Part shown: positions 25,796 through 54,946 of the stretch, one piece after another
Layout: every line of letters begins with the position of its first letter
How positions within the stretch are numbered: position 1 is the stretch's first letter
NCBI RefSeq assembly: GCF_006345805.1
Contig: NC_042998.1
Coordinates: 8,184,001-8,248,000, forward strand
DNA: 64,000 nt
Reading direction: 5' to 3'
DNA from: Octopus sinensis
Taxonomy: Eukaryota
Position numbers and translations under genes: made by a program
The notes under the pieces: generated by a model
Database searches by the model: none
What the model saw: only the letters and a program-made list of their open reading frames with translations
Told to the model about the DNA's origin: nothing

Positions 25796-26222
<427 letters not shown>

Positions 26223-27368: not shown

Positions 27369-27424
<56 letters not shown>

Positions 27425-27453
27425 CATCACCATCATCATCATCATCATCATCG

Positions 27454-27511
<58 letters not shown>

Positions 27512-27614
27512 TCATATTATTATTATTATTATTATTATTATATTTTTATTATTATTATCATCACCATCATCATCATCACATCATCATCATCATCATCATC
27601 ATTATTATTATTTT

Positions 27615-27645
<31 letters not shown>

Positions 27646-27678
27646 TTATCATCACCATCATCATCATCATCATCATCG

Positions 27679-27724
<46 letters not shown>

Positions 27725-27766
27725 TATTATTATATATTATTATTATTATTATCATCATCGTCATCA

Positions 27767-27846
<80 letters not shown>

Positions 27847-27866
27847 GTTTGTTATTATTATTATTA
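27369..27866. repeat. (ATT)n/(CAT)n microsatellite
   Basis: Direct inspection. Confidence 0.97.
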
Positions 27867-28190
27867 AGCTAACGAGCTGACAGAATTGTTAGCACGCTTC
27901 ACGTTCTGAGTTCAAATTCCGTTGTAGTCAGCTTTATCTTTCATCCTTTCAAGGTCGATAAAATAAGCACCACTGAAGCACTGGTGTTGAAGTAATCAAC
28001 TAAACTAGTTCCCAAAGTTCCAGGCCTTCTTGCTATAATGGAAAGGATTATTATGCTCAGCCTTCTCTCCTCCTCGTTTTCCACTGTTTTTAGAAGGAAA
28101 TATTGTTAAGCCCCTAAGGGAGTTTGTCTCCGCAATATTTAAACCGCCCAAGATGCACCAAAACGTCCTTACGACTCCGTCAAGATTTAC

Positions 28191-28510
28191 ACATGCACCC
28201 ACACACATACACACACATACACAAAGCTACACATATATATACATACATATATTCACACATACATACATACATACATGCACCCACACACATACACACACAT
28301 GCACAAAGCTACACATATATATACATACATATATTCACACATACATACATACATGCACCCATACACATACACACACATGCACAAAGCCACACATATATAT
28401 ACATATATTCACACATACATACATACATACATACACCCACACACATACACACACATGCACAAAGCTACACATATATACATACATATATTCACACATACAT
28501 ACATACATAC
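28191..28510. repeat. ~78-bp minisatellite x4 built from CA/TA-rich units
   Basis: CACAAAGC(T/C)ACACATATAT...TATTCACACATACATAC recurs four times. Confidence 0.8.
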
Positions 28511-29006
28511 ACACACATACATACATACATACATACATACATACATACATACATACATACATACATACATGCACACCCACCCACACGCATACGCATAAAA
28601 ATATTTATATTTGCATGCATGCGAGTAAGGAGGCATACCACAAGTCATAATATATATATGTCATGATAACCTTTTATAACATTATTTCTATCTACATAGA
28701 CATGCATTAGGCTAAAAAAATACTATACATATGATTCCTTAGTGGAATGTTCGCCTTCTGGAACGGATTACCAAGCGGAACTGACTTCTACATAGAAATT
28801 CAACCCGCACTTCATAAACCTGCCACGTATGCAGTAGGAATTTTCCAGCAGATTTTTTTACATTTTCATTTCCAGCGCCCTAGAACCCATATGTTGTAAA
28901 TTCGTGCAGGTTCGTGTTCTTCTTGTATATCAAATCCTTCTACAACTTATATTTCTATATAATATGAACATCATATCTTATATTCACTTGAAGGTTCTAT
29001 ACACAA

Positions 29007-31770: not shown

Positions 31771-32146
31771 GCTCATTCTTCGACTGTTTTCGTTACGCTA
31801 GCACCTGCGATACGAACACCAACAAGTTGACCTCTTTGAAAGTTAATAGATCTGTCATTTTAATGAATTTTAATTACCTGTTTTCTGATTATATCGGAAA
31901 AGAAACAGCAATTTTAGCAAAACATATTAAGCAACACTAATAATATGTTAAAAAGCATAAAAAGAAATAAGCTTTTGATGGTTTTATACATATTTCAAAA
32001 TTATGCTTAGGTGTTTCTATTATTTTATCCAACCCTTGAAAATATATATATATATATATAATGACACTTATATTTGAACACTATACAAATATTCTTTTAA
32101 ATAAACTTTTCTTTTAATTTTTCTAAATTTAATTTTTTAATTGTTA

Positions 32147-32183
32147 CAGTTGAAAAGGGCTTAAATGACCGAAACCGGTACTG
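32147..32183 (+). ncRNA. putative minimal type I hammerhead ribozyme (Penelope-type), U3-A8 core variant
   Basis: CAG-UUGAAAA-GGGC UUAAAU GACC-GAAA-CCGG-UA/CUG. Stem I is CAG/CUG and extendable, stem II has one G.A mismatch, stem III is the palindrome ACCGGU. Confidence 0.5.
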
Positions 32184-32345
32184 AAATGGTTTTTATAAAA
32201 TTATTTTAGCATTAGTCCCGGACAAACCACCCACACCCAGATATGTCACCGCAAACAATAACCCTCCGCTCGAATGGGCATTGGTGCCCAAATCCTGAAT
32301 TGAAAACTTTCTAAGTTATTCTAAGTTATATATATATATATATAT

Positions 32346-32914
32346 ATTTATATATAGAGGGCATTATACATACATGCCAGAAGGCATTATACATACATGC
32401 CAAACGCTAAGAGGGACAATTAGTCATTTCTACCAAAAATATTACTAATCCCACCGAATGCAATTTTTCAAAGTAAGACATTTAAAAAAATATAGACCTG
32501 TATCACAGTGATTTCATACTTACGTACTCATCAGCAGGCCTGAATGTATTATAAATAAACAACGACCCTGCCCGCTTAAGCCGATCAGCTAACTGCTCAA
32601 CATCAACGAAGCACATGGGTGAGTTTACATATATTACATCCGGATAAATGGCAAACTTTTACGAATTGCATTTCGGGAGAGGAAAAGGTTTTTCGGAATA
32701 AAAATTTAGCAATTAAGGACAACTACTTAATAAGGAAAACTTAACAAGAAATTGTCAGGTAGATAGCGTAAAAACCTCATAAGAGAAAAAATTTCGAAAA
32801 TAATTATTTCTTATTGAACATATTAATTTATATATAGAGGGCATTATACATACATGCCAGAAGGCATTATACATACATGCCAAACGCTAAGAGGGACAAT
32901 TAGTCATTTCTACC
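32346..32914 (-). repeat. inverted block of the 480-bp unit (one full unit plus 89 bp)
   Basis: Reverse complement of the array unit. Period 480 (32346 to 32826). Starts in (TA)n and switches orientation at ~32915. Confidence 0.95.
32494..32541 (-). ncRNA. type I hammerhead ribozyme motif (inverted copy)
   Basis: Minus strand reads AGGCCUG CUGAUGA GUAC GUAA GUAU GAAA UCAC U GUGA UA CAGGUCU, with an intact core. Confidence 0.88.
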
Positions 32915-33676
32915 ATTTTTTCGAAATTTTTTCTCTTATGAGGTTTTTACGCTATCTACCTGACAATTTCTTGTTAAGTTTTCCTTATTAAGTAGTTGTC
33001 CTTAATTGCTAAATTTTTATTCCGAAAAAACCTTTCCTCTCCCGAAATGCAATTCGTAAAAGTTTGCCATTTATCCGGATGTAATATATGTAAACTCACC
33101 CATGTGCTTCGTTGATGTTGAGCAGTTAGCTGATCGGCTTAAGCGGGGCAGGGTCGTTGTTTATTTATAATACATTCAGGCCTGCTGATGAGTACGTAAG
33201 TATGAAATCACTGTGACACAGGTCTATATTTTTTTAAATGTCTTACTTTGAAAAATTGCATTCAGTGGGAGTATAATATTTTTGGTAGAAATGACTAATT
33301 GTCCCTCTTAGCGTTTGGCATGTATGTATAATGCCTTCTGGCATGTATGTATAATGCCTTCTGGCATGTATGTATAATGCCCTCTATATATAAATTAATA
33401 TGTTCAATAAGAAATAATTATTTTCGAAATTTTTCTCTTATGAGGTTTTACGCTATCTACCTGACAATTTCTTGTTAAGTTTTCCTTATTAAGTAGTTGT
33501 CCTTAATTGCTAAATTTTTATTCCGAAAAAACTTTTCCTCTCCCGAAATGCAATTCGTAAAAGTTTGCCATTATCGGATGTAATATATGTAAACTCACCC
33601 ATGTGCTTCGTTGATGTTGATCAGTTAGCTGATCGGCTTAAGCGGGGCAGGGTCGTTGTTTATTTATAATACATTC

Positions 33677-33724
33677 AGGCCTGCTGATGAGTACGTAAGT
33701 ATGAAATCACTGTGATACAGGTCT
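33677..33724 (+). ncRNA. type I hammerhead ribozyme motif, representative intact copy; predicted cleavage between 33717 and 33718
   Basis: Stem I AGGCCUG/CAGGUCU, core CUGAUGA, stem II GUAC-GUAA-GUAU, GAAA, stem III AUCA-CUG-UGAU, cleavage triplet AUA (NUH). Confidence 0.9.
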
Positions 33725-36700
33725 ATATTTTTTTAAATGTCTTACTTTGAAAAATGCATTCGGTGGGATTAGTAAATTTTTGGTAGAAATGACTAATTGT
33801 CCCTCTTAGCGTTTGGCATGTATGTATAATGCCTTCTGGCATGTATGTATAATGCCCTCTATATATAAATTAATATGTTCAATAAGAAATAATTATTTTC
33901 GAAATTTTTCTCTTATGAGGTTTTTACGCTATCTACCTGACAATTTCTTGTTAAGTTTTCCTTATTAAGTAGTTGTCCTTAATTGCTAAATTTTTATTCC
34001 GAAAAACCTTTTCCTCTCCCGAAATGCAATTCGTAAAAGTTTGCCATTTATCCGGATGTAATATATGTAAACTCACCCATGTGCTTCGTTGATGTTGATC
34101 AGTTAGCTGATCGGCTTAAGCGGGCAGGGTCGTTGTTATTTATAATACATTCAGGCCTGCTGATGATTACGTAAGTATGAAATCACTGTGATACAGGTCT
34201 ATATTTTTTAAATGTCTTACTTTGAAAAATTGCATTCGGTGGGATTAGTAATATTTTTGGTAGAAATGACTATTGTCCCTCTTAGCGTTGGCATGTATGT
34301 ATAATGCCTTCTGGCATGTATGTATAATGCCCTCTATATATAAATTAATATGTTCAATAAGAAATAATTATTTTCGAAATTTTTTCTCTTATGAGTTTTT
34401 ACGCTATCTACCTGACAATTTCTTGTTAAGTTTCCTTATTAAGTAGTTGTCCTTAATTGCTAAATTTTTATTCCGAAAAAACTTTCCTCTCCCGAAATGC
34501 AATTCGTAAAAGTTTGCCATTTATCCGGATTTAATATATGTAAACTCACCCATGTGCTTCGTTGATGTTGAGCAGTTAGCTGATCGGCTTAAGCGGCGCA
34601 GGGTCGTTGTTTATTTATAATACATTCAGGCCTGCTGATGAGTACGTAAGTATGAAATCACTGTGATACAGGTCTATATTTTTTTAAATGTCTTACTTTG
34701 AAAAATTGCATTCGGTGGGATTAGTAATATTTTGGTAGAAATGACTAATTGTCCCTCTTAGCGTTTGGCATGTATGTATAATGCCTCCTGGCATGTATGT
34801 ATAATGCCCTCTATATATAAATTAATATGTTCAATAAGAAATAATTATTTTCGAAATTTTTTCTCTTATGAGGTTTTTACGCTATCTACCTGACAATTTC
34901 TTGTTAAGTTTTCCTTATTAAGTAGTTGTCCTTAATTGCTAAATTTTTATTCCGAAAAACCTTTTCCTCTCCCGAAATGCAATTCGTAAAAGTTTGCCAT
35001 TTATCCGGATGTAATATATGTAAACTCACCCATGTGCTTCGTTGATGTTGAGCAGTTAGCTGATCGGCTTAAGCGGGGCAGGGTCGTTGTTTATTTATAA
35101 TACATTCAGGCCTGCTGATGATTACGTAAGTATGAAATCACTGTGATACAGGTCTATATTTTTTTAAATGTCTTACTTTGAAAAATTGCATTCGGTGGGA
35201 TTAGTAATATTTTTGGTAGAAATGACTAATTGTCCCTCTTAGCGTTTGGCATGTATGTATAATGCCTTCTGGCATGTATGTATAATGCCCTCTATATATA
35301 AATTAATATGTTCAATAAGAAATAATTATTTTCGAAATTTTTTCTCTTATGAGGTTTTACGCTATCTACCTGACAATTTCTTGTTAAGTTTTCCTTATTA
35401 AGTAGTTGTCCTTAATTGCTAAATTTTTATTCCGAAAAACTTTTCCTCTCCCGAAATGCAATTCGTAAAAGTTTGCCATTATCCGGATGTAATATATGTA
35501 AACTCACCCATGTGCTTCGTTGATGTGAGCAGTTAGCTGATCGGCTTAAGCGCGGGCAGGGTCGTTGTTTATTTATAATACATTCAGGCCTGCTGATGAG
35601 TACGTAAGTATGAAATCACTGTGATACAGGTCTATATTTTTTAAATGTCTTACTTTGAAAAATTGCATTCGGTGGGATTAGTAATATTTTTGGTAGAAAT
35701 GACTAATTGTCCCTCTTAGCGTTTGGCATGTATGTATAATGCCTTCTGCATGCATGTATGTAATATAATGCCCTCTATATATAAATTAATATGTTCAATA
35801 AGAAATAATTATTTTCGAAATTTTTTCTCTTATGAGGTTTTTACGCTATCTACCTGACAATTTCTTGTTAAGTTTTCCTTATTAAGTAGTTGTCCTTAAT
35901 TGCTAAATTTTTATTCCGAAAAACCTTTTCCTCTCCCGAAATGCAATTCGTAAAAGTTTGCCATTTATCCGGATGTAATATATGTAAACTCACCCATGTG
36001 CTTCGTTGATGTTGATCAGTTAGCTGATCGGCTTAAGCGGGGCAGGGTCGTGTTTATTTATAATACATTCAGGCCTTCTGATGAGTACGTAAGTATGAAA
36101 TCACTGTGATACAGGTCTATATTTTTTTAAATGTCTTACTTTGAAAAATTGCATTCGGTGGGATTAGTAATATTTTTGGTAGAAAGAAATGACTTGTCCT
36201 CTTAGCGTTGGCATGTATGTATAATGCCTTCTGGCATGTATGTATAATGCCCTCTATATATAAATTAATATGTTCAATAAGAAATAATTATTTTCGAAAT
36301 TTTTTCTCTTATGAGGTTTTTACGCTATCTACCTGACAATTTCTTGTTAAGTTTTCCTTATTAAGTAGTTGTCCTTAATTGCTTAAATTTTTATTCCGAA
36401 AAACCTTTCCTCTCCCGAAATGCAATTCGTAAAAGTTGCCATTTATCCGGATGTAATATATGTAAACTCACCCATGTGCTTCGTTGATGTTGATCAGTTA
36501 GCTGATCGGCTTAAGCGGGGCAGGGTCGTTGTTTATTTATAATACATTCAGGCCTGCTGATGATTACGTAAGTATGAAATCACTGTGATACAGGTCTATA
36601 TTTTTTTAAATGTCTTACTTTGAAAAATTGCATTCGGTGGGATTAGTAATATTTTGGTAGAAATGACTATTGTCCCTCTTAGCGTTTGGCATGTATGTAT

Positions 36701-39700
36701 AATGCCTCCTGGCATGTATGTATAATGCCCTCTATATATAAATTAATATGTTCAATAAGAAATAATTATTTTCGAAATTTTTTCTCTTATGAGGTTTTTA
36801 CGCTATCTACCTGACAATTTCTTGTTAAGTTTTCCTTATTAAGTAGTTGTCCTTAATTGCTAAATTTTTATTCCGAAAAACTTTTCCTCTCCCGAAATGC
36901 AATTCGTAAAAGTTTGCCATTCATCCGGATGTAATATATGTAAACTCACCCATGTGCTTCGTTGATGTTGATCAGTTAGCTGATCGGCTTAAGCGGGGCA
37001 GGGTCGTTGTTTATTTATAATACATTCAGGCCTGCTGATGATTACGTAAGTATGAAATCACTGTGATACAGGTCTATATTTTTTAAATGTCTTACTTTGA
37101 AAAATTGCATTCGGTGGGATTAGTAATATTTTTGGTAGAAATGACTAATTGTCCCTCTTAGCGTTTGGCATGTATGTATAATGCCTCCTGGCATGTATGT
37201 ATAATGCCCTCTATATATAAATTAATATGTTCAATAAGAAATAATTATTTTCGAAATTTTTCTCTTATGAGGTTTTTACGCTATCTACCTGACAATTTCT
37301 TGTTAAGTTTTCCTTATTAAGTAGTTGTCCTTAATTGCTAAATTTTTATTCCGAAAAAACTTTTCCTCTCCCGAAATGCAATTCGTAAAAGTTTGCCATT
37401 ATCCGGATGTAATATATATAAACTCACCCATGTGCTTCGTTGATGTTGAGCAGTTAGCTGATCGGCTTAAGCGGGGCAGGGTCGTTGTTTATTTATAATA
37501 CATTCAGGCCTGCTGATGATTACGTAAGTATGAAATCACTGTGATACAGGTCTATATTTTTTAAATGTCTTACTTTGAAAAATTGCATTCGGTGGGATTA
37601 GTAATATTTTGGTAGAAATGACTGATTGTCCCTCTTAGCGTTTGGCATGTATGTATAATGCCTTCTGGCATGTATGTATAATGCCCTCTATATATAAATT
37701 AATATGTTCAATAAGAAATAATTATTTTCGAAATTTTTCTCTTATGAGGTTTTTACGCTATCTACCTGACAATTTCTTGTTAAGTTTTCCTTATTAAGTA
37801 GTTGTCCTTAATTGCTAAATTTTTATTCCGAAAAAACTTTTCCTCTCCCGAAATGCAATTCGTAAAAGTTTGCCATTCATCCGGATGTAATATATGTAAA
37901 CTCACCCATGTGCTTCGTTGATGTTGATCAGTTAGCTGATCGGCTTAAGCGGGGCAGGGTCGTTGTTTATTTATAATACATTCAGGCCTGCTGATGATTA
38001 CGTAAGTATGAAATCACTGTGATACAGGTATATTTTTTTAAATGTCTTACTTTGAAAAATTGCATTCGGTGGGATTAGTAATATTTTTGGTAGAAATGAC
38101 TGATTGTCCCTCTTAGCGTTTGGCATGTATGTATAATGCCTTCTGGCATGTATGTATAATGCCCTCTATATATAAATTAATATGTTCAATAAGAAATAAT
38201 TATTTTCGAAATTTTTTCTCTTATGAGGTTTTTACGCTATCTACCTGACAATTTCTTGTTAAGTTTTCCTTATTAAGTAGTTGTCCTTAATTGCTAAATT
38301 TTTATTCCGAAAAAACTTTTCCTCTCCCGAAATGCAATTCGTAAAAGTTTGCCATTATCCGGATTTAATATATAAACTCACCCATGTGCTTCGTTGATGT
38401 TGAGCAGTTAGCTGATCGGCTTAAGCGAGGCAGGGTCGTTGTTTATTTATATACATTCAGGCCTGCTGATGATTACGTAAGTATGAAATCACTGTGATAC
38501 AGGTCTATATTTTTTAAATGTCTTACTTTGAAAAATTGCATTCGGTGGGATTAGTAATATTTTGGTGGTAGAAATGACTAATTGTCCCTCTTAGCGTTTG
38601 GCATGTATGTATATAATGCCTCTGGCATGTATGTATAATGCCCTCTATATATAAATTAATATGTTCAATAAGAAATAATTATTTTCGAAATTTTTTCTCT
38701 TATGAGGTTTTTACGCTATCTACCTGACAATTTCTTGTTAAGTTTTCCTTATTAAGTAGTTGTCCTTAATTGCTAAATTTTTATTCCGAAAAACTTTTTC
38801 TCTCCGAAATGCAATTCGTTTGTAAAAGTTTGCCATTTATCCGGATGTAATATATATAAACTCACCCATGTGCTTCGTTGATGTTGATCAGTTAGCTGAT
38901 CGGCTTAAGCGGGGCAGGGTCGTTGTTTATTTATAATACATTCAGGCCTGCTGATGATTACGTAAGTATGAAATCACTGTGATACAGGTCTATATTTTTA
39001 AATGTCTTACTTTGAAAAATTGCATTCGGTGGGTGGATTAGTAATATTTTTGGTAGAAATGACTGATTGTCCCTCTTAGCGTTTGGCATGTATGTATAAT
39101 GCCTTCTGGCATGTATGTATAATTGCCCTCTATATATAAATTAATATGTTCAATAAGAAATAATTATTTTCGAAATTTTTTCTCTTATGAGGTTTTTACG
39201 CTATCTACCTGACAATTTCTTGTTAAGTTTTCCTTATTAAGTAGTTGTCCTTAATTGCTAAATTTTTATTCCGAAAAACCTTTCCTCTCCCGAAATGCAA
39301 TTCGTAAAAGTTTGCCATTCATCCGGATGTAATATATAAACTCACCCATGTGCTTCGTTGATGTTGAGCAGTTAGCTGATCGGCTTAAGCGGGCAGGGTC
39401 GTTGTTTATTTATAATACATTCAGGCCTGCTGATGATTACGTAAGTATGAAATCACTGTGATACAGGTCTATATTTTTAAATGTCTTACTTTGAAAAATT
39501 GCATTCGGTGGGATTAGTAATATTTTTGGTAGTAGAAATGACTGATTGTCCCTCTTAGCGTTTGGCATGTATGTATAATGCCTTCTGGCATGTATGTATA
39601 ATGCCCTCTATATATAAATTAATATGTTCAATAAGAAATAATTATTTTCGAAATTTTTTCTCTCTTATGAGGTTTTTACGCTATCTACCTGACAATTTCT

Positions 39701-42700
39701 TGTTAAGTTTTCCTTATTAAGTAGTTGTCCTTAATTGCTAAATTTTTATTCCGAAAAAACTTTTCCTCTCCCGAAATGCAATCGTAAAAGTTTGCCATTC
39801 ATCCGGATGTAATATATAAACTCACCCATGTGCTTCGTTGATGTTGATCAGTTAGCTGATCGGCTTAAGCGGGGCAGGGTCGTTGTTTATTTATAATACA
39901 TTCAGGCCTGCTGATGATTACGTAAGTATGAAATCACTGTGATACAGGTCTATATTTTTTTAAATGTCTTACTTTGAAAAATTGCATTCGGTGGGATTAG
40001 TAATATTTTTGGTAGAAATGAATGATTGTCCCTCTTAGCGTTTGGCATGTATATAATGCCTCCTGGCATGTATGTATAATGCCCTCTATATATAAATTAA
40101 TATGTTCAATAAGAAATAATTATTTTCGAAATTTTTTCTCTTATGAGGTTTTTACGCTATCTACCTGACAATTTCTTGTTAAGTTTTCCTTATTAAGTAG
40201 TTGTCCTTAATTGCAAAATTTTTATTCCGAAAAAACTTTTCCTCTCCCGAAATGCAATTCGTAAAAGTTTGCCATTCATCCGGATGTAATATATATAAAC
40301 TCACCCATGTGCTTCGTTGATGTTGATCAGTTAGCTGATCGGCTTAAGCGGGGCAGGGTCGTGTTGTTTATTTATAATACATTCAGGCCTGCTGATGATT
40401 ACGTAAGTATGAAATCACTGTGATACAGGTCTATATTTTTTAAATGTCTTACTTTGAAAAATTGCATTCGGTGGGATTAGTAATATTTTTGGTAGAAATG
40501 ACTGATTGTCCCTCTTAGCGTTTGGCATGTATGTATAATGCCTCCTGGCATGTATGTATAATGCCCTCTATATAAATTAATATGTTCAATAAGAAATAAT
40601 TATTTTCGAAATTTTTCTCTTATGAGGTTTTTACGCTATCTACCTGACAATTTCTTGTTAAGTTTTCCTTATTAAGTAGTTGTCCTTAATTGCTAAATTT
40701 TTATTCCGAAAAAACTTTTCCTCTCCCGAAATGCAATTCGTAAAAGTTTGCCATTATCCGGATGTAATATATATAAACTCACCCATGTGCTTCGTTGATG
40801 TTGAGATTAGTTAGCTGATCGGCTTAAGCGGGGCAGGGTCGTTGTTTATTTATAATACATTCAGGCCTGCTGATGATTACGTAAGTATGAAATCACTGTG
40901 ATACAGGTCTATATTTTTTTAAATGTCTTACTTTGAAAAATTGCATTCGGTGGGATTAGTAATATTTTGTAGTAGAAATGACTGATTGTCCCTCTTAGCG
41001 TTTGGCATGTATATATAATGCCTCCTGGCATGTATGTATAATGCCCTCTATATATAAATTAATATGTTCAATAAGAAATAATTATTTTCGAAATTTTTTC
41101 TCTTATGAGGTTTTTACGCTATCTACCTGACAATTTCTTGTTAAGTTTCCTTATTAAGTAGTTGTCCTTAATTGCTAAATTTTTATTCCGAAAAACTTTT
41201 CCTCTCCCGAAATGCAATTCGTAAAAGTTGCCATTCATCCGGATGTAATATATGTATAAACTCACCCATGTGCTTCGTTGATGTTGATCAGTTAGCTGAT
41301 CGGCTTAAGCGGGGCAGGGTCGTTGTTTATTTATAATACATTCAGGCCTGCTGATGAGTACGTAAGTATGAAATCACTGTGATACAGGTCTATATTTTTT
41401 TAAATGTCTTACTTTGAAAAATTGCATTCGGTGGTGGGATTAGTAATATTTTTGGTAGAAATGATATGTCCCTCTTAGCGTTTGGCATGTATGTATAATG
41501 CCTTCTGGCATGTATGTATAATGCCCTCTATATATAAATTAATATGTTCAATAAGAAATAATTATTTTCGAAATTTTTTCTCTTATGAGTTTTTTACGCT
41601 ATCTACCTGACAATTTCTTGTTAAGTTTTCCTTATTAAGTAGTTGTCCTTAATTGCTAAATTTTTATTCCGAAAAAACTTTTCCTCTCCCGAAATGCAAT
41701 TCGTAAAAGTTTGCCATTTATCCGGATGTAATATATGTAAACTCACCCATGTGCTTCGTTGATGTTGATCAGTTAGCTGATCGGCTTAAGCGGGGCAGGG
41801 TCGTTGTTTATTTATAATACATTCAGGCCTGCTGATGAGTACGTAAGTATGAAATCACTGTGATACAGGTCTATATTTTTTTAAATGTCTTACTTTGAAA
41901 AATTGCATTCGGTGGGATTAGTAATATTTTTGGTAGAAATGACTAATGTCCCTCTTAGCGTTTGGCATGTATGTATAATGCCTTCTGGCATGTATGTGTA
42001 TAATGCCCTCTATATATAAATTAATATGTTCAATAAGAAATAATTATTTTCGAAATTTTTTCTCTTATGAGGTTTTTACGCTATCTACCTGACAATTTCT
42101 TGTTAAGTTTTCCTTATTAAGTAGTTGTCCTTAATTGCTAAATTTTTATTCCGAAAAAACTTTTCCTCTCCCGAAATGCAATTCGTAAAAGTTTGCCATT
42201 TATCCGGATTTAATATATGTAAACTCACCCATGTGCTTCGTTGATGTTGATCAGTTAGCTGATCGGCTTAAGCGCAGGAGGGTCGTTGTTTATTTATAAT
42301 ACATTCAGGCCTGCTGATGAGTACGTAAGTATGAAATCACTGTGATACAGGTCTATATTTTTTTAAATGTCTTACTTTGAAAAATTGCATTCGGTGGGAT
42401 TAGTAATATTTTTGTGTGTAGAATGACTAATTGTCCCTCTTAGCGTTTGGCATGTATGTATAATGCCTTCTGGCATGTATGTATAATGCCCTCTATATAT
42501 AAATTAATATGTTCAATAAGAAATAATTATTTTCGAAATTTTTTCTCTTATGAGGTTTTTACGCTATCTACCTGACAATTTCTTGTTAAGTTTTCCTTAT
42601 TAAGTAGTTGTCCTTAATTGCAAAATTTTTATTCCGAAAAACCTTTTCCTCTCCCGAAATGCAATTCGTAAAAGTTTGCCATTTATCCGGATGTAATATA

Positions 42701-45700
42701 TGTAAACTCACCCATGTGCTTCGTTGATGTTGATCAGTTAGCTGATCGGCTTAAGCGGGGCGGGTCGGTCGTTGTTTATTTATAATACATTCAGGCCTGC
42801 TGATGATTACGTAAGTATGAAATCACTGTGATACAGGTCTATATTTTTAAATGTCTTACTTTGAAAAATTGCATTCGGTGGGATTAGTAATATTTTTTGG
42901 TAGAAATGACTAATTGTCCCTCTTAGCGTTTGGCATGTATGTATAATGCCTTCTGGCATGTATGTATAATGCCCTCTATATATAAATTAATATGTTCAAT
43001 AAGAAATAATTATTTTCGAAATTTTTTCTCTTATGAGGTTTTTACGCTATCTACCTGACAATTTCTTGTTAAGTTTTCCTTATTAAGTAGTTGTCCTTAA
43101 TTGCTAAATTTTTATTCCGAAAAAACTTTTCCTCTCCCGAAATGCAATTCGTAAAAGTTTGCCATTTATCCGGATGTAATATATGTAAACTCACCCATGT
43201 GCTTCGTTGATGTTGAGCAGTTAGCTGATCGGCTTAAGCGGGGCAGGGTCGTTGTTTATTTATAATACATTCAGGCCTGCTGATGAGTACGTAAGTATGA
43301 AATCACTGTGATACAGGTCTATATTTTTTTAAATGTCTTACTTTGAAAAATTGCATTCGGTGGGATTAGTAATATTTTTGGTAGAAATGACTGATTGTCC
43401 CTCTTAGCGTTTGGCATGTATGTATAATGCCTTCTGGCATGTATGTATAATGCCCTCTATATATAAATTAATATGTTCAATAAGAAAGAAATAATTATTT
43501 TCGAAATTTTTTCTCTTATGAGGTTTTTACGCTATCTACCTGACAATTTCTTGTTAAGTTTTCCTTATTAAGTAGTTGTCCTTAATTGCTAAATTTTTAT
43601 TCCGAAAAAACTTTTCCTCTCCCGAAATGCAATTCGTAAAAGTTTGCCATTTATCCGGATGTAATATATATAAACTCACCCATGTGCTTCGTTGATGTTG
43701 ATCAGTTAGCTGATCGGCTTAAGCGGGCAGGGTCGTTGTTTATTTATAATACATTCAGGCCTGCTGATGATTACGTAAGTATGAAATCACTGTGATACAG
43801 GTCTATATTTTTTAAATGTCTTACTTTGAAAAATTGCATTCGGTGGGATTAGATTAGTAATATTTTGGTAGAAATGACTGATTGTCCCTCTTAGCGTTTG
43901 GCATGTATGTATAATGCCTTCTGGCATGTATGTATAATGCCCTCTATATATAAATTAATATGTTCAATAAGAAATAATTATTTTCGAAATTTTTTCTATG
44001 AGGTTTTTACGCTATCTACCTGACACTTTCTTGTTAAGTTTTCCTTATTAAGTAGTTGTCCTTAATTGCTAAATTTTTATTCCGAAAAACCTTTTCCTCT
44101 CCCGAAATGCAATTCGTAAAAGTTTGCCATTTATCCGGATGTAATATATGTAAACTCACCCATGTGCTTCGTTGATGTTGAGCAGTTAGCTGATCGGCTT
44201 AAGCGGGGCAGGGTCGTTGTTTTATTTACATTACATGGCCTGCTGATGATTACGTAAGTATGAAATCACTGTGATACAGGTCTATTTTTTTAAATGTCTT
44301 ACTTTGAAAAATTGCATTCGGTGGGATTAGTAATATTTTTGGTAGAAATGACTGATTGTCCCTCTTAGCGTTTGGCATGTATGTATAATGCCTTCTGGCA
44401 TGTATGTATAATGCCCTCTATATATAAATAATATGTTCAATAAGAAATAATATTTTCGAATTTTTTCTCTTATGAGGTTTTTACGCTATCTACCTGACAA
44501 TTCTTGTTAAGTTTTCCTTATTAAGTAGTTGTCCTTAATTGCTAAATTTTTATTCCGAAAAAACTTTTCCTCTCCCGAAATGCAATTCGTTAAAAGTTTG
44601 CCATTATCCGGATTTAATATATGTAAACTCACCCATGTGCTTCGTTGATGTTGATCAGTTAGCTGATCGGCTTAAGCGGGGCAGGGTCGTTGTTTATTTA
44701 TAATACATTCAGGCCTGCTGATGATTACGTAAGTATGAAATCACTGTGATACAGGTCTATATTTTTTAAATGTCTTACTTTGAAAAATTGCATTCGGTGG
44801 GATTAGTAATATTTTTGGTAGAAATGACTGATTGTCCCTCTTAGCGTTTGGCATGTATGTATAATGCCTTCTGGCATGTATGTATAATGCCCTCTATATA
44901 TAAATTAATATGTTCAATAAGAAATAATTATTTTCGAAATTTTTTCTCTTATGAGGTTTTTACGCTATCTACCTGACAATTTCTTGTTAAGTTTTCCTTA
45001 TTAAGTAGTTGTCCTTAATTGCTAAATTTTTATTCCGAAAAACCTTTCCTCTCCCGAAATGCAATTCGTAAAAGTTTGCCATTATCCGGATGTAATATAT
45101 GTAAACTCACCCATGTGCTTCGTTGATGTTGAGCAGTTAGCTGATCGGCTTAAGCGGGCAGGGTCGTTGTTTATTTATAATACATTCAGGCCTGCTGATG
45201 ATTACGTAAGTATGAAATCACTGTGATACAGGTCTATATTTTTTTAAATGTCTTACTTTGAAAAATTGCATTCGGTGGGATTAGTAATATTTTTGGTAGA
45301 AATGACTGATTGTCCCTCTTAGCGTTTGGCATGTATGTATAATGCCTTCTGGCATGTATGTATAATGCCCTCTATATATAAATTAATATGTTCAATAAGA
45401 AATAATTATTTTCGAAATTTTTCTCTTATGAGGTTTTTACGCTATCTACCTGACAATTTCTTGTTAAGTTTTCCTTATTAAGTAGTTGTCCTTAATTGCT
45501 AAATTTTTATTCCGAAAAAACTTTTCCTCTCCCGAAATGCAATTCGTAAAAGTTTGCCATTTATCCGGATGTAATATATGTAAACTCACCCATGTGCTTC
45601 GTTGATGTTGAGCAGTTAGCTGATCGGCTTAAGCGGGGCAGGGTCGTTGTTTTATAATACATTCAGGCCTGCTGATGAGTACGTAAGTATGAAATCACTG

Positions 45701-48700
45701 TGATACAGGTCTATATTTTTTAAATGTCTTACTTTGAAAAATTGCATTCGGTGGGATTAGTAATATTTTTGGTGGTAGAAATGACTAATTGTCCCTCTTA
45801 GCGTTTGGCATGTATGTATAATGCCTTCTGGCTGGGTATGTATAATGCCCTCTATATATAAATTAATATGTTCAATAAGAAATAATTATTTTCGAAATTT
45901 TTTCTCTTATGAGGTTTTTACGCTATCTACCTGACAATTTCTTGTTAAGTTTTCCTTATTAAGTAGTTGTCCTTAATTGCTAAATTTTTATTCCGAAAAA
46001 ACTTTTCCTCTCCCGAAATGCAATTCGTAAAAGTTTGCCATTATCCGGATGTAATATATGTAAACTCACCATGTGCTTCGTTGATGTTGATCAGTTAGCT
46101 GATCGGCTTAAGCGGGCAGGGTCGTTGTTTATTTATATACATTCAGGCCTGCTGATGAGTACGTAAGTATGAAATCACTGTGATACAGGTCTATATTTTT
46201 AAATGTCTTACTTTGAAAAATTGCATTCGGTGGGATTAGTAATATTTTTGGTAGAAATGACTAATGTCCCTCTTAGCGTTTGGCATGTATGTATAATGCC
46301 TTCTGGCATGTATGTATAATGCCCTCTATATATAAATTAATATGTTCAATAAGAAATAATTATTTTCGAAATTTTTTCTCTTATGAGGTTTTTACGCTAT
46401 CTACCTGACAATTTCTTGTTAAGTTTCCTTATTAAGTAGTTGTCCTTAATTGCTAAATTTTTATTCCGAAAAACTTTTCCTCTCCCGAAATGCAATTCGT
46501 AAAAGTTGCCATTCATCCGGATGTATATATATGTAACTCACCCATGTGCTTCGTTGATGTTGATCAGTTAGCTGATCGGCTTAAGCGGGCAGGGTCGTTG
46601 TTTATTTATAATACATTCAGGCCTGCTGATGATTACGTAAGTATGAAATCACTGTGATACAGGTCTATTTTTTTAAATGTCTTACTTTGAAAAATTGCAT
46701 TCGGTGGGATTAGTAATATTTTTGGTAGAAATGACTAATTGTCCCTCTTAGCGTTGGCATGTATGTATAATGCCTTCTGGCATGTATGTATAATGCCCTC
46801 TATATATAAATTAATATGTTCAATAAGAAATAATTATTTTCGAAATTTTTTCTCTTATGAGGTTTTTACGCTATCTACCTGACAATTTCTTGTTAAGTTT
46901 TCCTTATTAAGTAGTTGTCCTTAATTGCTAAATTTTTATTCCGAAAAAACTTTTCCTCTCCCGAAATGCAATTCGTAAAAGTTTGCCATTTATCCGGATG
47001 TAATATATGTAAACTCACCCATGTGCTTCGTTGATGTTGATCAGTTAGCTGATCGGCTTAAGCGGGGCAGGGTCGTTGTTTATTTATAATACATTCAGGC
47101 CTTCTGATGAGTACGTAAGTATGAAATCACTGTGATACAGGTCTATATTTTTAAATGTCTTACTTTGAAAAATTGCATTCGGTGGGATTAGTAATATTTT
47201 TGGTAGAAATGACTAATTGTCCCTCTTAGCGTTTGGCATGTATGTATAATGCCTCTGGCATGTATGTATAATGCCCTCTATATATAAATTAATATGTTCA
47301 ATAAGAAATAATTATTTTCGAAATTTTTTCTCTTATGAGGTTTTTACGCTATCTACCTGACAATTTCTTGTTAAGTTGTCCTTATTAAGTAGTTGTCCTT
47401 AATTGCTAAATTTTTATTCCGAAAAAACTTTCCTCTCCCGAAATGCAATTCGTAAAAGTTTGCCATTATCGGATGTAATATATGTAAACTCACCCATGTG
47501 CTTCGTTGATGTTGAACAGTTAGCTGATCAACTTAAGCGGGGCAAGGTCGTTGTTTATCTATGATGCATTCAGGCCTGCTGATGAGTACGTAAGTATGAA
47601 ATCACTGTGATACAGGTCTATATATTTTTTAAATGTCTTACTTTGAAAAATTGCATTCGGTGGGATTAGTAATATTTTTGGTAGAAATGACTAATTGTCC
47701 CTCTTAGCGTTTGGCATGTATGTATAATGCCTTCTGGCATGTATGTATAATGCCCTCTATATATAAATTAATATGTTCAATAAGAAATAATTATTTTCGA
47801 AATTTTTTCTCTTATGAGGTTTTTACGCTATCTACCTGACACTTTCTTGTTAAGTTTTCCTTATTAAGTAGTTGTCCTTAATTGCTAAATTTTTATTCCG
47901 AAAAACCTTTTCCTCTCCCGAAATGCAATTCGTAAAAGTTTGCCATTCATCCGGATGTAATATATGTAAACTCCCATGTGCTTCGTTGATGTTGAGCAGT
48001 TAGCTGATCGGCTTAAGCGGGGCAGGGTCGTTGTTTATTTATAATACATTCAGGCCTGCTGATGAGTACGTAAGTATGAAATCACTGTGATACAGGTCTA
48101 TTTTTTTTAAATGTCTTACTTTGAAAAATTGCATTCGGTGGGATTAGTAATATTTTTGGTAGAAATGACTAATGTCCCTCTTAGCGTTTGCATGTATGTA
48201 TAATGCCTTCTGGCATGTATGTATAATGCCCTCTATATATAATTAATATGTTCAATAAGAAATAATTATTTTCGAAATTTTTTCTCTTATGAGGTTTTTA
48301 CGCTATCTACCTGACAATTTCTTGTTAAGTTTTCCTTATTAAGTAGTTGTCCTTAATTGCTAAATTTTTATTCCGAAAAAACTTTTCCTCTCCCGAAATG
48401 CAATTCGTAAAAGTTTGCCATTTATCCGGATGTAATATGTAAACTCACCCATGTGCTTCGTTGATGTTGATCAGTTAGCTGATCGGCTTAAGCGGGGCAG
48501 GGTCGTTGTTTATTTATAATACATTCAGGCCTGCTGATGAGTACGTAAGTATGAAATCACTGTGATACAGGTCTATATTTTTTAAATGTCTTACTTTGAA
48601 AAATTGCATTCGGTGGGATTAGTAATATTTTGGTAGAAATGACTAATTGTCCCTCTTAGCGTTTGGCATGTATGTATAATGCCTTCTGGCATGTATGTAT

Positions 48701-49478
48701 AATGCCCTCTATATATAAATTAATATGTTCAATAAGAAATAATTATTTTCGAAATTTTTTCTCTTATGAGGTTTTTACGCTATCTACCTGACAATTTCTT
48801 GTTAAGTTTTCCTTATTAAGTAGTGTCCTTAATTGCTAAATTTTTATTCCGAAAAAACTTTTCCTCTCCCGAAATGCAATTCGTAAAAGTTTGCCATTTA
48901 TCGGATGTAATATATGTAAACTCACCCATGTGCTTCGTTGATGTTGAGCAGTTAGCTGATGGCTTAAGCGGGGCAGGGTCGTTGTTTATTTATAATACAT
49001 TCAGGCCTGCTGATGTTACGTAAGTATGAAATCACTGTGATACAGGTCTATATTTTTTTTAAAGTCTACTTTGAAAAATTGCATTCGGTGGGATTAGTAA
49101 TATTTTGGTAGAAATGACTAATTGTCCCTCTTAGCGTTTGGCATGTGTATAATGCCTTCTGGCATGTATGTATAATGCCCTCTATATATAAATTAATATG
49201 TTCAATAAGAAATAATTATTTTCGAAATTTTTTCTCTTATGAGGTTTTTACGCTATCTACCTGACAATTTCTTGTTAAGTTTTCCTTATTAAGTAGTTGT
49301 CCTTAATTGCTAAATTTTTATTCCGAAAAACCTTTTCCTCTCCCGAAATGCAATTCGTAAAAGTTTGCCATTTATCCGGATGTAATATATGTAAACTCAC
49401 CCATGTGCTTCGTTGATGTTGAGCAGTTAGCTGATCGGCTTAAGCGGGGCAGGGTCGTTGTTTATTTATAATACATTC

Positions 49479-49526
49479 AGGCCTTCTGATGAGTACGTAA
49501 GTATGAAATCACTGTGATACAGGTCT
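49479..49526 (+). ncRNA. last hammerhead motif of the array (G-to-U change at the stem I closing pair)
   Basis: AGGCCUU CUGAUGA GUAC GUAA GUAU GAAA UCACUGUGA UA CAGGUCU. Confidence 0.8.
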
Positions 49527-49784
49527 ATATTTTTTTTAAATGTCTTACTTTGAAAAATTGCATTCGGTGGGATTAGTAATATTTTTGGTAGAAATGACTA
49601 ATTGTCCCTCTTAGCGTTTGGCATGTATGTATAATGCCTTCTGGCATGTATGTATAATGCCCTCTATATATAAATTAATATGTTCAATAAGAAATAATTA
49701 TTTTCGAAATTTTTTCTCTTATGAGGTTTTTACGCTATCTACCTGACAATCTTGTTAAGTTTTCCTTATTAAGTAGTTGTCCTT

Positions 49785-49792
<8 letters not shown>

Positions 49793-49863
<71 letters not shown>

Positions 49864-49950
49864 CATGTATTTGCGTAAATATATATGGTACACATACATA
49901 TGCATAAATATATATGTACATATATATAATATATACACACATATATATGC

Positions 49951-50015
<65 letters not shown>

Positions 50016-50030
50016 CATACATATATATAT
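49793..50030. repeat. (TA)n microsatellite at the right flank of the array
   Basis: Direct inspection. Confidence 0.95.
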
Positions 50031-50572
50031 ATTCACCCACACACGAGATTGCTTTCTTTGGGTTTCTGGCAATCAAATACACTCACAAGGAGTTTGGGAA
50101 CATGGGACTATAGTAGATCACATTTGCCCATTGGTACTAAACTCGGAACCATGTGGTTGGGAAGCAAGTTTCCTGCCACACAAACACTTATTTGTATGTG
50201 TATGTCTCTGTCTCTGTGTGTGTGTATGTGCGTGCGCGTGTATGCTGTATATATGTACTGAAATCTTCATTTAATTTTACGTGTGAAGTATCAACCAAGT
50301 GACCTTGTACTAGAAATACTTTTATTTATATCTTAAAGGAAAACACTCAGGTTTCACTATATTTTAGTTTCGCTTTCCGCTCCCAATGTTTCAACTTACG
50401 GAACAAGTAAAGTGCTGTTTTCTTTTCAGTTTATCTTATACAATTTTATTTAAACAGCATCATTTTTTCCCGTGGTAACAACCATTTTTCATTGTACTCA
50501 ATGAACCCTTTACTTTTCTCGGGTAACTTTAGTAGTTAAATTCATGCGTGTAGAGTGTGCGTTAGTGTGTGT

Positions 50573-54500: not shown

Positions 54501-54730
54501 GAAGGGCTGACACCTTGTGCATTGAGTAGGAATGTGGAGGTTAGTGTAGTGGCTGGTTTTGACTGTTGCAGGGGCCTTGGATTTTTTGTGTGTGTTAGTG
54601 GCAGCAATGTGGGGAATTGGTGCACTGGGGTAATAGCATAGGATGGTGTTGAGTGATGGCTAGAATCTTTTTGTGTATCTCTTTTGCCATGTTCAACATG
54701 GCTAAAAAAGAATTTTCCTGCTTAGGGAGC
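51523..54730 (-). mobile_element. CR1-type LINE remnant (APE+RT, multiple frameshifts) with an octamer 3' tail
   Basis: APE: LNAQG, LTETHL, LYRPP, MGDFNLP, LDLVF, SDH (54625-53700). RT: NYRPISLTS, YLDFSKAFD, GVPQGTVLGPLLF, FFADD (53059-52100). The 3' end is an 8-bp repeat (CAAAGTAT)x3 at 51523-51546, next to (TA)n. Confidence 0.92.
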
Positions 54731-54865
54731 AGTTTTTTGCTGGAGGTATGGTTGCACTGTTGGATAGGGTTGTAGTTTCCACTTTTGTTGTTGTTGTTTT
54801 TGTGTGTGTCTCTCTCTCTCTCTATATATATATATATAGAGAGAGAGAGAGACAGGCCGACAGAC

Positions 54866-54946
<81 letters not shown>

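What the first reader, a model, noticed from the sequence alone, without database searches (positions are those of the whole stretch)
32346..49792. 17-kb array of ~36 hammerhead ribozymes: a candidate cephalopod non-LTR retrozyme / circRNA system
Seen: a ~480-bp unit without a substantial ORF, repeated about 35 times, essentially every copy with a complete type I hammerhead motif in the same orientation (stem I AGGCCUG/CAGGUCU, CUGAUGA, stem II GUAC-GUAA-GUAU, GAAA, stem III, AUA cleavage triplet). Established: tandem repeats with type I hammerheads (newt satellite 2, Schistosoma Smalpha, cricket pDo500, metazoan non-LTR retrozymes) are transcribed, self-cleave into monomers and can circularise. 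Inference: read-through transcription would give ~480-nt RNAs starting CAGGUCUAU and ending GUGAUA, with 2',3'-cyclic phosphate and 5'-OH ends that RtcB-type ligases can join into circles, and an RT supplied in trans could copy these into concatemers. The unit is longer than the ~170-400 nt I recall for animal retrozymes. I know of no description of this family, but novelty needs a search.
Basis: partly seen in the sequence, partly recalled or inferred. Interest (0 to 1): 0.95.

Follow-up and report, generated by a model that had tools for sequence, protein, structure and literature searches.

The report
Hammerhead-ribozyme satellite array, retrozyme type
A 17-kb block of non-coding 480-bp repeats, probably in an octopus genome, carries a self-cleaving hammerhead ribozyme motif in every unit; it is a new example of a known kind of animal mobile element (non-LTR retrozymes) and its activity is untested.

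Summary
The array is real: a 478-bp unit x 34.4 on the + strand (32918-49792), plus a 1.2-unit inverted segment (32340-32915). It holds 36 type I hammerhead motifs and no ORF over 66 aa. A formal descriptor finds the motif nowhere else in the window and in none of 300 shuffles. Only 13/36 copies have the quoted motif, 19 carry U at 10.1 (a U.U mismatch at the base of helix II), and 5 have damaging changes. Even the best copies pair G10.1 with U11.1 instead of the conserved G-C. Rfam does not certify the motif (16.6 bits against a gathering score of 52). Other evidence fits a non-LTR retrozyme: 33% GC; a strongly structured +-strand monomer RNA (z -6.2) whose ends are joined by helix I; and a palindromic helix III that favours a double hammerhead. 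The array lies in a (TA)n microsatellite with an inverted truncated copy upstream, the insertion pattern of Penelope-like elements. Unit length is not unusual: published ranges are 51-972 bp, and cricket pDo500 is ~500 bp. Cephalopod origin is moderately supported. I found no external copies, so covariation, cleavage and circles remain untested. Verdict: new member of a known kind, modest interest.

The parts
32327..32356 (.). (TA)n microsatellite abutting the left end of the repeat block
   Evidence: TRF, period 2, 15 copies; sequence read
32340..32915 (-). Inverted, truncated 1.2-unit segment. Read on the - strand it covers consensus 65-480 then 1-160. It forms a ~460-bp inverted repeat with the first forward unit
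   Evidence: BLAST of the consensus; inverted-repeat arms 32340-32800 / 32918-33401, 97-100% complementary, 117-nt spacer
32494..32541 (-). Hammerhead motif of the inverted segment, an exact match to the best (G10.1) version
32918..49792 (+). Forward tandem array with 35 hammerhead motifs and units of 474-499 bp. It starts at consensus position 180 and ends at consensus position 273
33677..33724 (+). Representative complete type I hammerhead: helix I AGGCCUG/CAGGUCU, core CUGAUGA, helix II GUAC-GUAA-GUAU, GAAA, helix III AUCA-CUG-UGAU, H17 = A. Predicted cleavage is between 33717 and 33718
41385..41865 (+). Representative monomer (cleavage site to cleavage site, 481 nt) used for folding. The three consecutive units 41344-42354 all carry the exact motif
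   Evidence: + strand MFE -135.5 kcal/mol, z -6.19; - strand -95.2, z -3.94; circular fold -128.8, 67% paired
36550..40910 (+). Central block of 10 consecutive units whose hammerhead has U at 10.1 (U.U mismatch at the base of helix II), linked to G at consensus position 79
33178..33225 (+). First forward hammerhead copy, defective: U16.1->C breaks the essential A15.1-U16.1 pair
49003..49049 (+). Defective copy with a 1-nt deletion in the core (CUGAUG-UUAC, A9 lost). Copies at 36071, 47097 and 49479 have G2.1->U
33814..33869 (+). Sub-repeat inside each unit: two 23-bp copies (TGGCATGTATGTATAATGCCYTC, each a small hairpin; three copies in the first forward unit), followed at once by TATATATAAA. 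The promoter reading of this TATA-like box is conjecture
   Evidence: TRF 23-bp rows in nearly every unit; sequence
49794..50032 (.). (TA)n microsatellite abutting the right end of the array
   Evidence: TRF, period 2, 120 copies; sequence

Best explanation
This is a genomic array of a non-LTR-retrozyme-type repeat: a non-coding, AT-rich 480-bp unit that carries one type I hammerhead ribozyme (HHR) per unit on the + strand.

Proposed mechanism, with the status of each step marked.
(1) Shown: each unit encodes the full HHR core (C3-A9, G12-A14, A15.1-U16.1, H17 = A), with helix I of 7 bp, helix II of 4 bp closed by a GUAA loop, and helix III of 4 bp.
(2) Inferred: read-through +-strand transcripts cleave after GUGAUA. 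This releases ~480-nt monomers that begin CAGGUCU (5'-OH) and end in a 2',3'-cyclic phosphate.
(3) Computed: helix III is marginal as a hairpin (-0.2 kcal/mol), and in the isolated motif a competing pairing sequesters core U4-U7. Helix III is also a near-perfect palindrome (AUCAC-U-GUGAU), so two motifs form a 10-bp intermolecular helix III (-12.1 kcal/mol). The inference is that cleavage most likely occurs as a double hammerhead on multimeric transcripts, as in newt, axolotl and Penelope-like element (PLE) ribozymes.
(4) Computed: in the monomer, helix I pairs the 5' end with the 3' region, and the rest folds into a stable branched structure. The inference is that this juxtaposes the termini for ligation by an RtcB-type ligase, or by self-ligation, into a circle.
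(5) Inferred from locus anatomy: the element was integrated by PLE machinery. The array is a tandem, sits inside a (TA)n microsatellite, and has an inverted 5'-truncated copy at its upstream end.
(6) Inferred: after insertion the array evolved at the DNA level. The weakened U10.1 variant is absent from both edges and from the inverted copy, but fills a central block of 10 units. This suggests spread by unequal exchange without selection for catalysis at this locus.
For: - Array and motif counts.
- Descriptor scan: 31/36 copies pass, no hits elsewhere in the window, and 0 hits in 300 shuffles.
- Rfam aligns the motif to a type I hammerhead model with the correct core, helix II, helix III and cleavage-site register.
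- HHR MFE is -12.4 kcal/mol (G10.1) and -10.3 (U10.1), with helices I and II formed.
- The cofold MFE is exactly the double hammerhead, with ddG -5.7 and -7.7 kcal/mol relative to two monomers.
- Monomer RNA: + strand -135.5 kcal/mol with z -6.19, against - strand -95.2 with z -3.94. The means over 34 units are -127.8 and -93.5, and helix I closes the ends in 31/34 units.
- GC is 33%. No ORF exceeds 66 aa.
- Published precedents: tandem type I HHR repeats of 150-450 bp with low GC and highly self-paired circRNAs; a mussel family lacking the canonical loop contacts; axolotl HHR_Amex2 with a U.U mismatch at the base of helix II that still cleaves and does so better as a dimer.
- The operational criteria of the 2026 preprint are all met.
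- PLE insertion hallmarks (tandem copies, an inverted 5'-truncated copy, a (TA)n target) are described and seen here.
- Penelope elements are reported in octopus genomes.
Against: - No hammerhead family reaches Rfam's gathering score.
- The G10.1-C11.1 pair, called highly conserved in canonical HHRs, is G.U in 17 copies and U.U in 19.
- Five copies have core or helix defects.
- Within the array the ribozyme is not clearly more conserved than the rest of the unit. Pi is 0.0153 against 0.0170, and position 10.1 is the most polymorphic site in the unit.
- In the isolated 48-mer, the MFE pairs core U4-U7 with 15.1-15.4 instead of forming helix III. The canonical fold is 3 kcal/mol less stable.
- The loop 1-loop 2 tertiary contacts could not be identified.
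- I found no second locus or species, so there is no covariation evidence.
- No PLE ORF lies in the window.
- The PLE-footprint argument rests on a single locus.
- No expression data are available.
Confidence: 0.72

Rival explanations
1. Decayed relic. The repeat descends from a hammerhead-bearing element (a retrozyme or a PLE terminal repeat), but its ribozyme is no longer catalytically competent. The array is now ordinary satellite DNA maintained and resized by unequal crossing-over, with no RNA life cycle.
For: U11.1 in all copies and U10.1 in 19/36. A weakened variant fills the central block. Five further defective copies exist. The ribozyme shows no excess conservation within the array. 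Rfam scores are below threshold. Distance rises slightly with separation, from 0.0148 at lag 1 to 0.0171 at lag 10, as expected for local DNA-level homogenisation.
Against: All strictly required core positions are intact in 31/36 copies. Only 3 of 48 ribozyme sites vary, against 76 of 432 elsewhere. The axolotl HHR with a U.U mismatch at the same place is active. The strong strand-specific RNA structure and the end-joining helix I would not be expected to persist in a neutral satellite. Units differ by only 1.6%, so the array is young.
Confidence: 0.2
2. Chance resemblance: an ordinary satellite whose unit happens to contain a hammerhead-like string.
For: All 36 copies derive from one ancestral unit, so there is only one independent occurrence. 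In a genome of gigabase size a relaxed descriptor should give a few chance hits. My own rough calculation gives about 2e-9 per position for the relaxed descriptor.
Against: There were 0 hits in 300 shuffles of 64 kb. The actual motif is much stronger than the descriptor minimum: 7-bp helix I, a GNRA-capped helix II, a palindromic helix III and the correct core register. It sits in exactly the genomic setting where type I HHRs are known to occur, and helix I closes the monomer ends.
Confidence: 0.03
3. The block is part of an autonomous Penelope-like element (tandem pseudo-LTRs), or the inverted left end is an assembly artefact of a long-read assembly.
For: PLEs carry HHRs in terminal repeats and form tandem or inverted structures. 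Many differences between units are homopolymer-length indels typical of long-read errors.
Against: No ORF exceeds 66 aa anywhere in the 17 kb, and no RT or GIY-YIG domain lies in or beside it. The window's RT and endonuclease ORFs are of the LINE (EEP) type. The inversion junction joins consensus position 65 to position 180, so it is not the symmetric palindrome that a missed-adapter artefact would give.
Confidence: 0.05

Closest known systems
Metazoan non-LTR retrozymes (Cervera & de la Pena 2020, PMC7229834: coral, mussel, axolotl; extended to vertebrates in bioRxiv 10.64898/2026.07.22.740005)
   Same: A tandem, non-coding, low-GC repeat of a few hundred bp with one type I HHR per unit. The predicted monomer RNA is highly self-paired. 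No LTR, PBS or PPT is present. As in the mussel family, the canonical loop 1-loop 2 nucleotides are not evident.
   Different: Position 11.1 is U instead of C in every copy. Helix III (4 bp plus a 3-nt loop, fully palindromic) is longer than the usual 1-2 bp. The motif falls below all Rfam hammerhead thresholds. Expression and circles are not shown. The sequence is unrelated to anything retrievable here.
Dolichopoda cave-cricket pDo500 satellite (PMC2837043)
   Same: A ~500-bp satellite unit with an embedded ~49-nt hammerhead that can also form an extended double-hammerhead structure. It shows that a 480-bp unit is not exceptional.
   Different: In pDo500 the ribozyme is significantly more conserved than the rest of the unit across 12 species, with compensatory changes and demonstrated self-cleavage. 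Only one locus is available here, there is no clear excess conservation, and there is no activity test.
Newt satellite 2 and axolotl HHR_Amex1 / HHR_Amex2
   Same: Type I HHRs in 330-350-bp tandem repeats that cleave poorly as monomers and well as dimers. HHR_Amex2 has a U.U mismatch at the base of helix II, like the majority variant here.
   Different: The amphibian helix III is 1-2 bp. The host phylum differs and there is no sequence similarity.
Minimal hammerheads in pseudo-LTRs of Penelope-like elements (PMC4209133; PLE structure in PMC8557442)
   Same: A palindromic helix III and dimeric action. The genomic footprint of tandem copies, an inverted 5'-truncated copy upstream and microsatellite targets matches this locus.
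   Different: [quoted passage not shown] None of these is seen here.
Plant LTR retrozymes (PMC4918200)
   Same: Non-autonomous, non-coding elements whose HHRs excise an RNA that circularises.
   Different: The plant elements use type III HHRs in ~350-bp LTRs and have PBS/PPT, 4-bp TSDs and GC above 55%. They are dimeric rather than long tandem arrays.

Membership tests
Hammerhead ribozyme, type I | Conserved core C3-U4-G5-A6-N7-G8-A9, G12-A13-A14, A15.1-U16.1 and H17 (not G), in the correct order between three helices | tested here: met
   Present in 31/36 copies by the descriptor and aligned in the correct register by Infernal. Exceptions are 33178 (U16.1C) and 49003 (A9 deleted); three further copies break the 1.1-2.1 pair.
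Hammerhead ribozyme, type I | Topology: helices II and III closed by loops, helix I open | tested here: met
   Helix II is closed by GUAA and helix III by CUG. Helix I is formed by the flanking strands AGGCCUG/CAGGUCU.
Hammerhead ribozyme, type I | Reaches the curated Rfam gathering score of a hammerhead family (clan CL00010) | tested here: not met
   No hit at gathering score. The best is Hammerhead_HH9 at 16.6 bits against 52.
Hammerhead ribozyme, type I | G10.1-C11.1 base pair (highly conserved in canonical HHRs, PMC4209133) | tested here: not met
   U11.1 in all 36 copies: a G.U wobble in 17 and a U.U mismatch in 19. The axolotl HHR_Amex2 is an active precedent for U.U.
Hammerhead ribozyme, type I | Loop 1-loop 2 tertiary contacts that support activity at physiological Mg2+ | tested here: inconclusive
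   Helix I opens after 7 bp into a U-rich junction (AUAUUUUUU), and loop 2 is GUAA. I could not recognise canonical contact nucleotides. Mussel retrozyme HHRs also lack them.
Hammerhead ribozyme, type I | Helices supported by covariation among homologues | not testable with these tools
   No homologous locus was retrievable. The within-array variants are uncompensated.
Hammerhead ribozyme, type I | Site-specific Mg2+-dependent self-cleavage | not testable with these tools
   This needs in vitro transcription of monomer and dimer constructs.
Non-LTR retrozyme | Tandem repeat of a few hundred bp with at least two consecutive units carrying a complete HHR whose MFE is below -5 kcal/mol (criteria of bioRxiv 10.64898/2026.07.22.740005) | tested here: met
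   TRF gives 478 bp x 34.4. Runs of complete units exist, for example 41344, 41825 and 42307. HHR MFE is -12.4 or -10.3 kcal/mol. Criteria are quoted.
Non-LTR retrozyme | Non-coding, low GC (below 45-50%), no LTR/PBS/PPT | tested here: met
   The longest ORF is 66 aa and is not conserved. GC is 33%. The structure is a simple tandem with no LTR. I did not search specifically for PBS or PPT.
Non-LTR retrozyme | Monomer RNA predicted to be highly self-paired | tested here: met
   z -6.19 with 0 of 100 shuffles as stable. 67% of bases are paired as a circle. The + strand is 34 kcal/mol more stable than the - strand on average.
Non-LTR retrozyme | Expressed as linear and circular monomer RNAs | not testable with these tools
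   No transcriptome of the source species is reachable. The mini-ORF bait found nothing in the protein collection, which includes Logan assemblies.
Non-LTR retrozyme | Dispersed copies elsewhere in the genome (mobility), and co-occurrence with or homology to PLEs | not testable with these tools
   Only one locus lies in the 64 kb and the window holds no PLE ORF. The literature reports Penelope elements in octopuses. The locus anatomy resembles a PLE insertion.
Penelope-like element (autonomous) | ORF with a PLE-type RT and a GIY-YIG endonuclease between pseudo-LTRs | tested here: not met
   No ORF over 66 aa in the array. The Pfam hits in the window are to LINE-type EEP endonuclease and RVT_1 only.

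The most novel reading that the evidence does not exclude
This could be the founding locus of an undescribed cephalopod retrozyme family. Its hammerhead would use a non-canonical 10.1-11.1 pair (G.U or U.U) and so would escape Rfam-based annotation. It would act obligately as a dimer through a fully palindromic helix III. The insertion architecture, inside a (TA)n microsatellite with an inverted 5'-truncated copy upstream, would be locus-level evidence that PLE endonuclease/RT machinery integrates non-LTR retrozymes. That link is so far argued only from co-occurrence and from similarity to PLE terminal repeats.
Probability: 0.3. Interest if true: 0.45.

Novelty: new member of a known kind. Interest (0 to 1): 0.3.

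Why it matters
If active, the repeat would extend ribozyme-made circular RNAs (retrozymes) to cephalopods. It would also add a natural hammerhead variant with U at 11.1, useful for defining which deviations the core tolerates and for improving search models: current Rfam models miss this motif. The flank anatomy gives a simple, testable prediction about how animal retrozymes integrate, namely PLE-style into microsatellites with inverted truncated copies. The published reviews say no motif in these repeats identifies the mobilising element. None of this changes the established picture of hammerhead satellites; it is an incremental addition.

Tried and rejected
- Rfam at gathering score over the whole window returned only a tRNA. 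Permissive Rfam over 32000-36000 and over 121 nt gave only a sub-threshold HH9 alignment and no other ribozyme class on either strand.
- I searched for external copies six ways, all without result: the HHR pattern in viral contigs, in metagenome contigs and in prokaryote genome contigs; a second unit segment in metagenome contigs; exact look-ups of the two commonest mini-ORFs; and a concatenate of seven mini-ORFs against 5.8 billion proteins. Covariation and expression therefore could not be tested.
- A literal search for the ribozyme sequence in 8.3 million papers returned nothing.
- Organism identification through the LINE endonuclease ORF was uninformative, with a best hit of 37%. The RT ORF gave the Octopus lead.
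- I considered and rejected a coding function, a tRNA-derived SINE (ARAGORN finds nothing in the array), an autonomous PLE, and a symmetric palindrome artefact at the inversion.
- The HH9-like hit at 32136-32200, just left of the array (17.9 bits, E 0.84), lacks C3 and G8 and is treated as chance.
- The 'unit longer than known retrozymes' claim is rejected on the published ranges.

Full report

Yes in substance. Tandem Repeats Finder reports a single large array at 33339-49792 with period 478, 34.4 copies and 96% matches. BLAST of the unit consensus against the window places the whole repeat block at 32340-49792 and finds no copy anywhere else in the 64 kb.

The longest ORF in the 17 kb is 66 aa, and the small ORFs differ from unit to unit, so the repeat is non-coding.

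**2. Is the motif a hammerhead, and is it more than chance?**

The sequence reads AGGCCUG / CUGAUGA / GUAC-GUAA-GUAU / GAA / AUCA-CUG-UGAU / A | CAGGUCU. All invariant core positions are present. Helices II and III are closed by loops and helix I is open, which is type I topology.

I wrote a type I descriptor: helix I of at least 5 bp, CUGANGA, at least 3 inner pairs in helix II, GAAA, A15.1-U16.1 plus at least 2 pairs, H17 not G. It hits 31 of the 36 copies, nothing else on either strand of the window, and nothing in 300 dinucleotide-preserving shuffles of the window. All copies share one ancestor, so this is one independent event. Even so, the actual motif is much stronger than the descriptor minimum.

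Curated models do not certify it. Rfam at gathering score finds only a tRNA. In permissive mode the best result is Hammerhead_HH9, a type I family, at 16.6 bits against a threshold of 52 (E 0.07 on 121 nt), although the alignment is in the correct register for the core, helix II, helix III and the cleavage site.

**3. How good are the copies?**

The 36 copies fall into these classes:

| Class | Copies | Positions |
|---|---|---|
| Exact quoted motif | 13 | 12 on + strand, plus the inverted copy at 32494 |
| G10.1->U only (U.U mismatch at the base of helix II) | 16 | |
| U10.1 plus a second change | 3 | 37984 (C1.6A), 44235 (1-nt insertion in helix I), 49003 (A9 deleted) |
| G2.1->U | 3 | 36071, 47097, 49479 |
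| U16.1->C (breaks an essential pair) | 1 | 33178 |

- Even the 'exact' version pairs G10.1 with U11.1 rather than forming the G10.1-C11.1 pair, which Cervera & de la Pena describe as highly conserved in canonical hammerheads (PMC4209133).
- A published precedent softens this. The axolotl HHR_Amex2 has a U.U mismatch at the base of helix II and still self-cleaves, 22% per hour as a monomer and much better as a dimer (PMC7229834).
- The U10.1 variant is absent from both array edges and from the inverted copy, but occupies ten consecutive central units (36550-40910) and is linked to a second variant at consensus position 79. I infer that G is ancestral and that U spread by DNA-level amplification.
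- Units differ by 1.6% in substitutions. Distance rises slightly with separation, from 0.0148 at lag 1 to 0.0171 at lag 10.
- Many indel differences lie in homopolymers and may be long-read errors.
- The ribozyme is not clearly more conserved than the rest of the unit. Pi is 0.0153 against 0.0170. Only 3 of 48 ribozyme sites vary, against 76 of 432 elsewhere, but position 10.1 is the most polymorphic site in the unit. This is unlike cricket pDo500, where excess conservation and compensatory changes were shown across species.

**4. Structure**

- *Isolated motif.* The 48-nt motif folds with helices I and II as expected. Its MFE (-12.4 kcal/mol) pairs core U4-U7 with positions 15.1-15.4, and the canonical fold is 3 kcal/mol less stable.
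- *Helix III and the dimer.* Helix III alone is marginal (-0.2 kcal/mol). Its sequence AUCAC-U-GUGAU is a near-perfect palindrome, and two copies form a 10-bp intermolecular helix (-12.1 kcal/mol). The cofold MFE of two motifs is exactly the double hammerhead with free cores, at ddG -5.7 (G10.1) and -7.7 (U10.1) kcal/mol relative to two monomers. This is the arrangement established for newt, axolotl and PLE hammerheads, so I favour dimeric cleavage on multimeric transcripts.
- *Whole monomer.* The +-strand monomer is strongly structured: -135.5 kcal/mol, z -6.19, with none of 100 shuffles as stable. The complementary strand gives -95.2 and z -3.94. Over 34 units the means are -127.8 and -93.5.
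- *End joining.* In 31 of 34 units the MFE pairs the 5'-terminal CAGGUCU with AGGCCUG near the 3' end. That places the two termini side by side, the geometry needed for ligation into a circle. As a circle the RNA is 67% paired.
- *Fit to the literature.* The strand asymmetry and the end-joining helix are the best evidence available here for an RNA-level function. They match the 'highly self-paired' circRNAs described for animal retrozymes.

**5. Surroundings and how it got there**

The array is bounded by (TA)n on both sides: 32327-32356 on the left and 49794-50032 on the right. Its left end is an inverted, truncated 1.2-unit segment (32340-32915). This segment joins at consensus position 65 to the forward array, which starts at consensus position 180. 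Together they form a ~460-bp inverted repeat of 97-100% complementarity. The junction is asymmetric, so it is not a simple palindromic assembly artefact.

Craig et al. describe exactly this anatomy for Penelope-like elements: partial tandems, an inverted 5'-truncated copy next to the upstream repeat, and a strong insertion bias for microsatellites, (TA)n in Naiads (PMC8557442). The retrozyme papers propose PLEs as the mobilising elements on the basis of co-occurrence and similarity to terminal repeats, but they do not discuss such footprints. This locus therefore offers a small independent hint in the same direction. It is one locus only.

No PLE ORF lies in the window. The RT and endonuclease ORFs present are LINE-type.

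**6. Organism**

The window's RT ORF (55052-56038) is 81% identical over 294 aa to an Octopus RefSeq protein. That is the highest identity among all named hits; fish, crayfish, urchin and unnamed assemblies reach 58-78%. This fits the RTE-BovB expansion reported for octopuses and that family's relatives in aquatic vertebrates. The extreme microsatellite density is also compatible. 'Cephalopod, probably octopod' is moderately supported but not proven.

**7. Comparison with what is known**

- The kind is well established: newt satellite 2 (1987), Schistosoma Sm-alpha, cricket pDo500 and, since 2020, 'non-LTR retrozymes'.
- Unit length is unremarkable. Published ranges are 150-450 bp and 51-972 bp with up to 300 units, and pDo500 is about 500 bp.
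- All operational criteria of the 2026 preprint are met: a TRF repeat, an HHR descriptor hit, MFE below -5 kcal/mol and at least two consecutive complete units.
- Type I hammerheads have been counted in a cephalopod genome before: 235 Rfam Hammerhead_1 hits in the giant squid.
- I found no description of a cephalopod retrozyme, of this satellite, or of this ribozyme sequence in the paper library.
- The points that differ from the canonical picture are U11.1, the longer and fully palindromic helix III, and the sub-threshold Rfam score.

**8. Verdict**

This is a new member of a known kind. The class assignment is well supported at the sequence level. Catalysis, circular RNA and mobility are inferred and untested, and there are real signs of relaxed constraint on the ribozyme within this array. 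I put interest at about 0.3.

No step in this work touched the categories that must be referred.

Noticed in passing
window 8638-8723 (-): A eukaryote-type tRNA-Leu(CAA) gene with a long variable arm. Rfam gives 57.6 bits and ARAGORN agrees.
   Followed up: partly
window 921-2428 (-), 52110-54625 (-), 55052-56038 (+), 26472-27191 (-): Fragments of LINE-type retrotransposons, with frames broken into several ORFs: EEP endonuclease at 1310-2428 and 53331-54242, and RVT_1 at 52366-52788 and 55052-56038. The RT at 55052-56038 is 81% identical to an Octopus RefSeq 'jockey-like' protein and 58-78% identical to proteins from fish, crayfish and urchin. The 239-aa ORF at 26472-27191 has no significant Pfam hit (one weak match below the gathering score).
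   Followed up: partly
window 12128-14429, 17240-18612, 20215-20464, 24425-27866, 28189-28592, 54862-57132, 62891-63715: Very high density of long microsatellites, including (ATT)n up to ~500 bp, (ACAT)n 580 bp, (TTC)n 435 bp and many (AT)n. They generate long spurious low-complexity ORFs.
   Followed up: no
window 28191-28529 and 10799-10999: Two other small tandem repeats: a 78-bp unit x 4.3 embedded in CA/ACAT-rich sequence, and a 100-bp unit x 2. Neither contains a hammerhead descriptor hit.
   Followed up: partly
window 33316-33385 and the equivalent place in every unit (for example 33814-33869): Inside each unit there is a 23-bp sub-repeat (TGGCATGTATGTATAATGCCYTC, itself a small hairpin). 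It is present twice, and three times in the first forward unit, which explains that unit's 499-bp length. TATATATAAA follows immediately. It could be a promoter-like module (TATA box with upstream repeats). This is untested conjecture.
   Followed up: no
window 32340-33401: The inverted left-end segment and the first forward unit form a ~460-bp near-perfect inverted repeat with a 117-nt spacer. If transcribed through, it would make a long dsRNA hairpin, a potential substrate for small-RNA silencing or ADAR editing of the family.
   Followed up: no
window 32136-32200 (+): A sub-threshold Rfam Hammerhead_HH9 match (17.9 bits, E 0.84) lies about 150 bp left of the array. Core positions C3 and G8 are not conserved, so I judged it a chance match.
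   Followed up: yes
window 32311-32330: A 10-bp direct duplication, TCTAAGTTAT TCTAAGTTAT, lies immediately before the left (TA)n tract. Whether it relates to the insertion event is unknown, and no matching copy was seen at the right flank.
   Followed up: no
array 32918-49792, consensus positions 10-11, 61-64, 189, 287-294, 325-352: Most length differences between units are single-base changes in T or A homopolymer runs. This is compatible with long-read consensus errors rather than real variation, so the 96% TRF identity understates true unit similarity (substitutions alone give 1.6%).
   Followed up: partly
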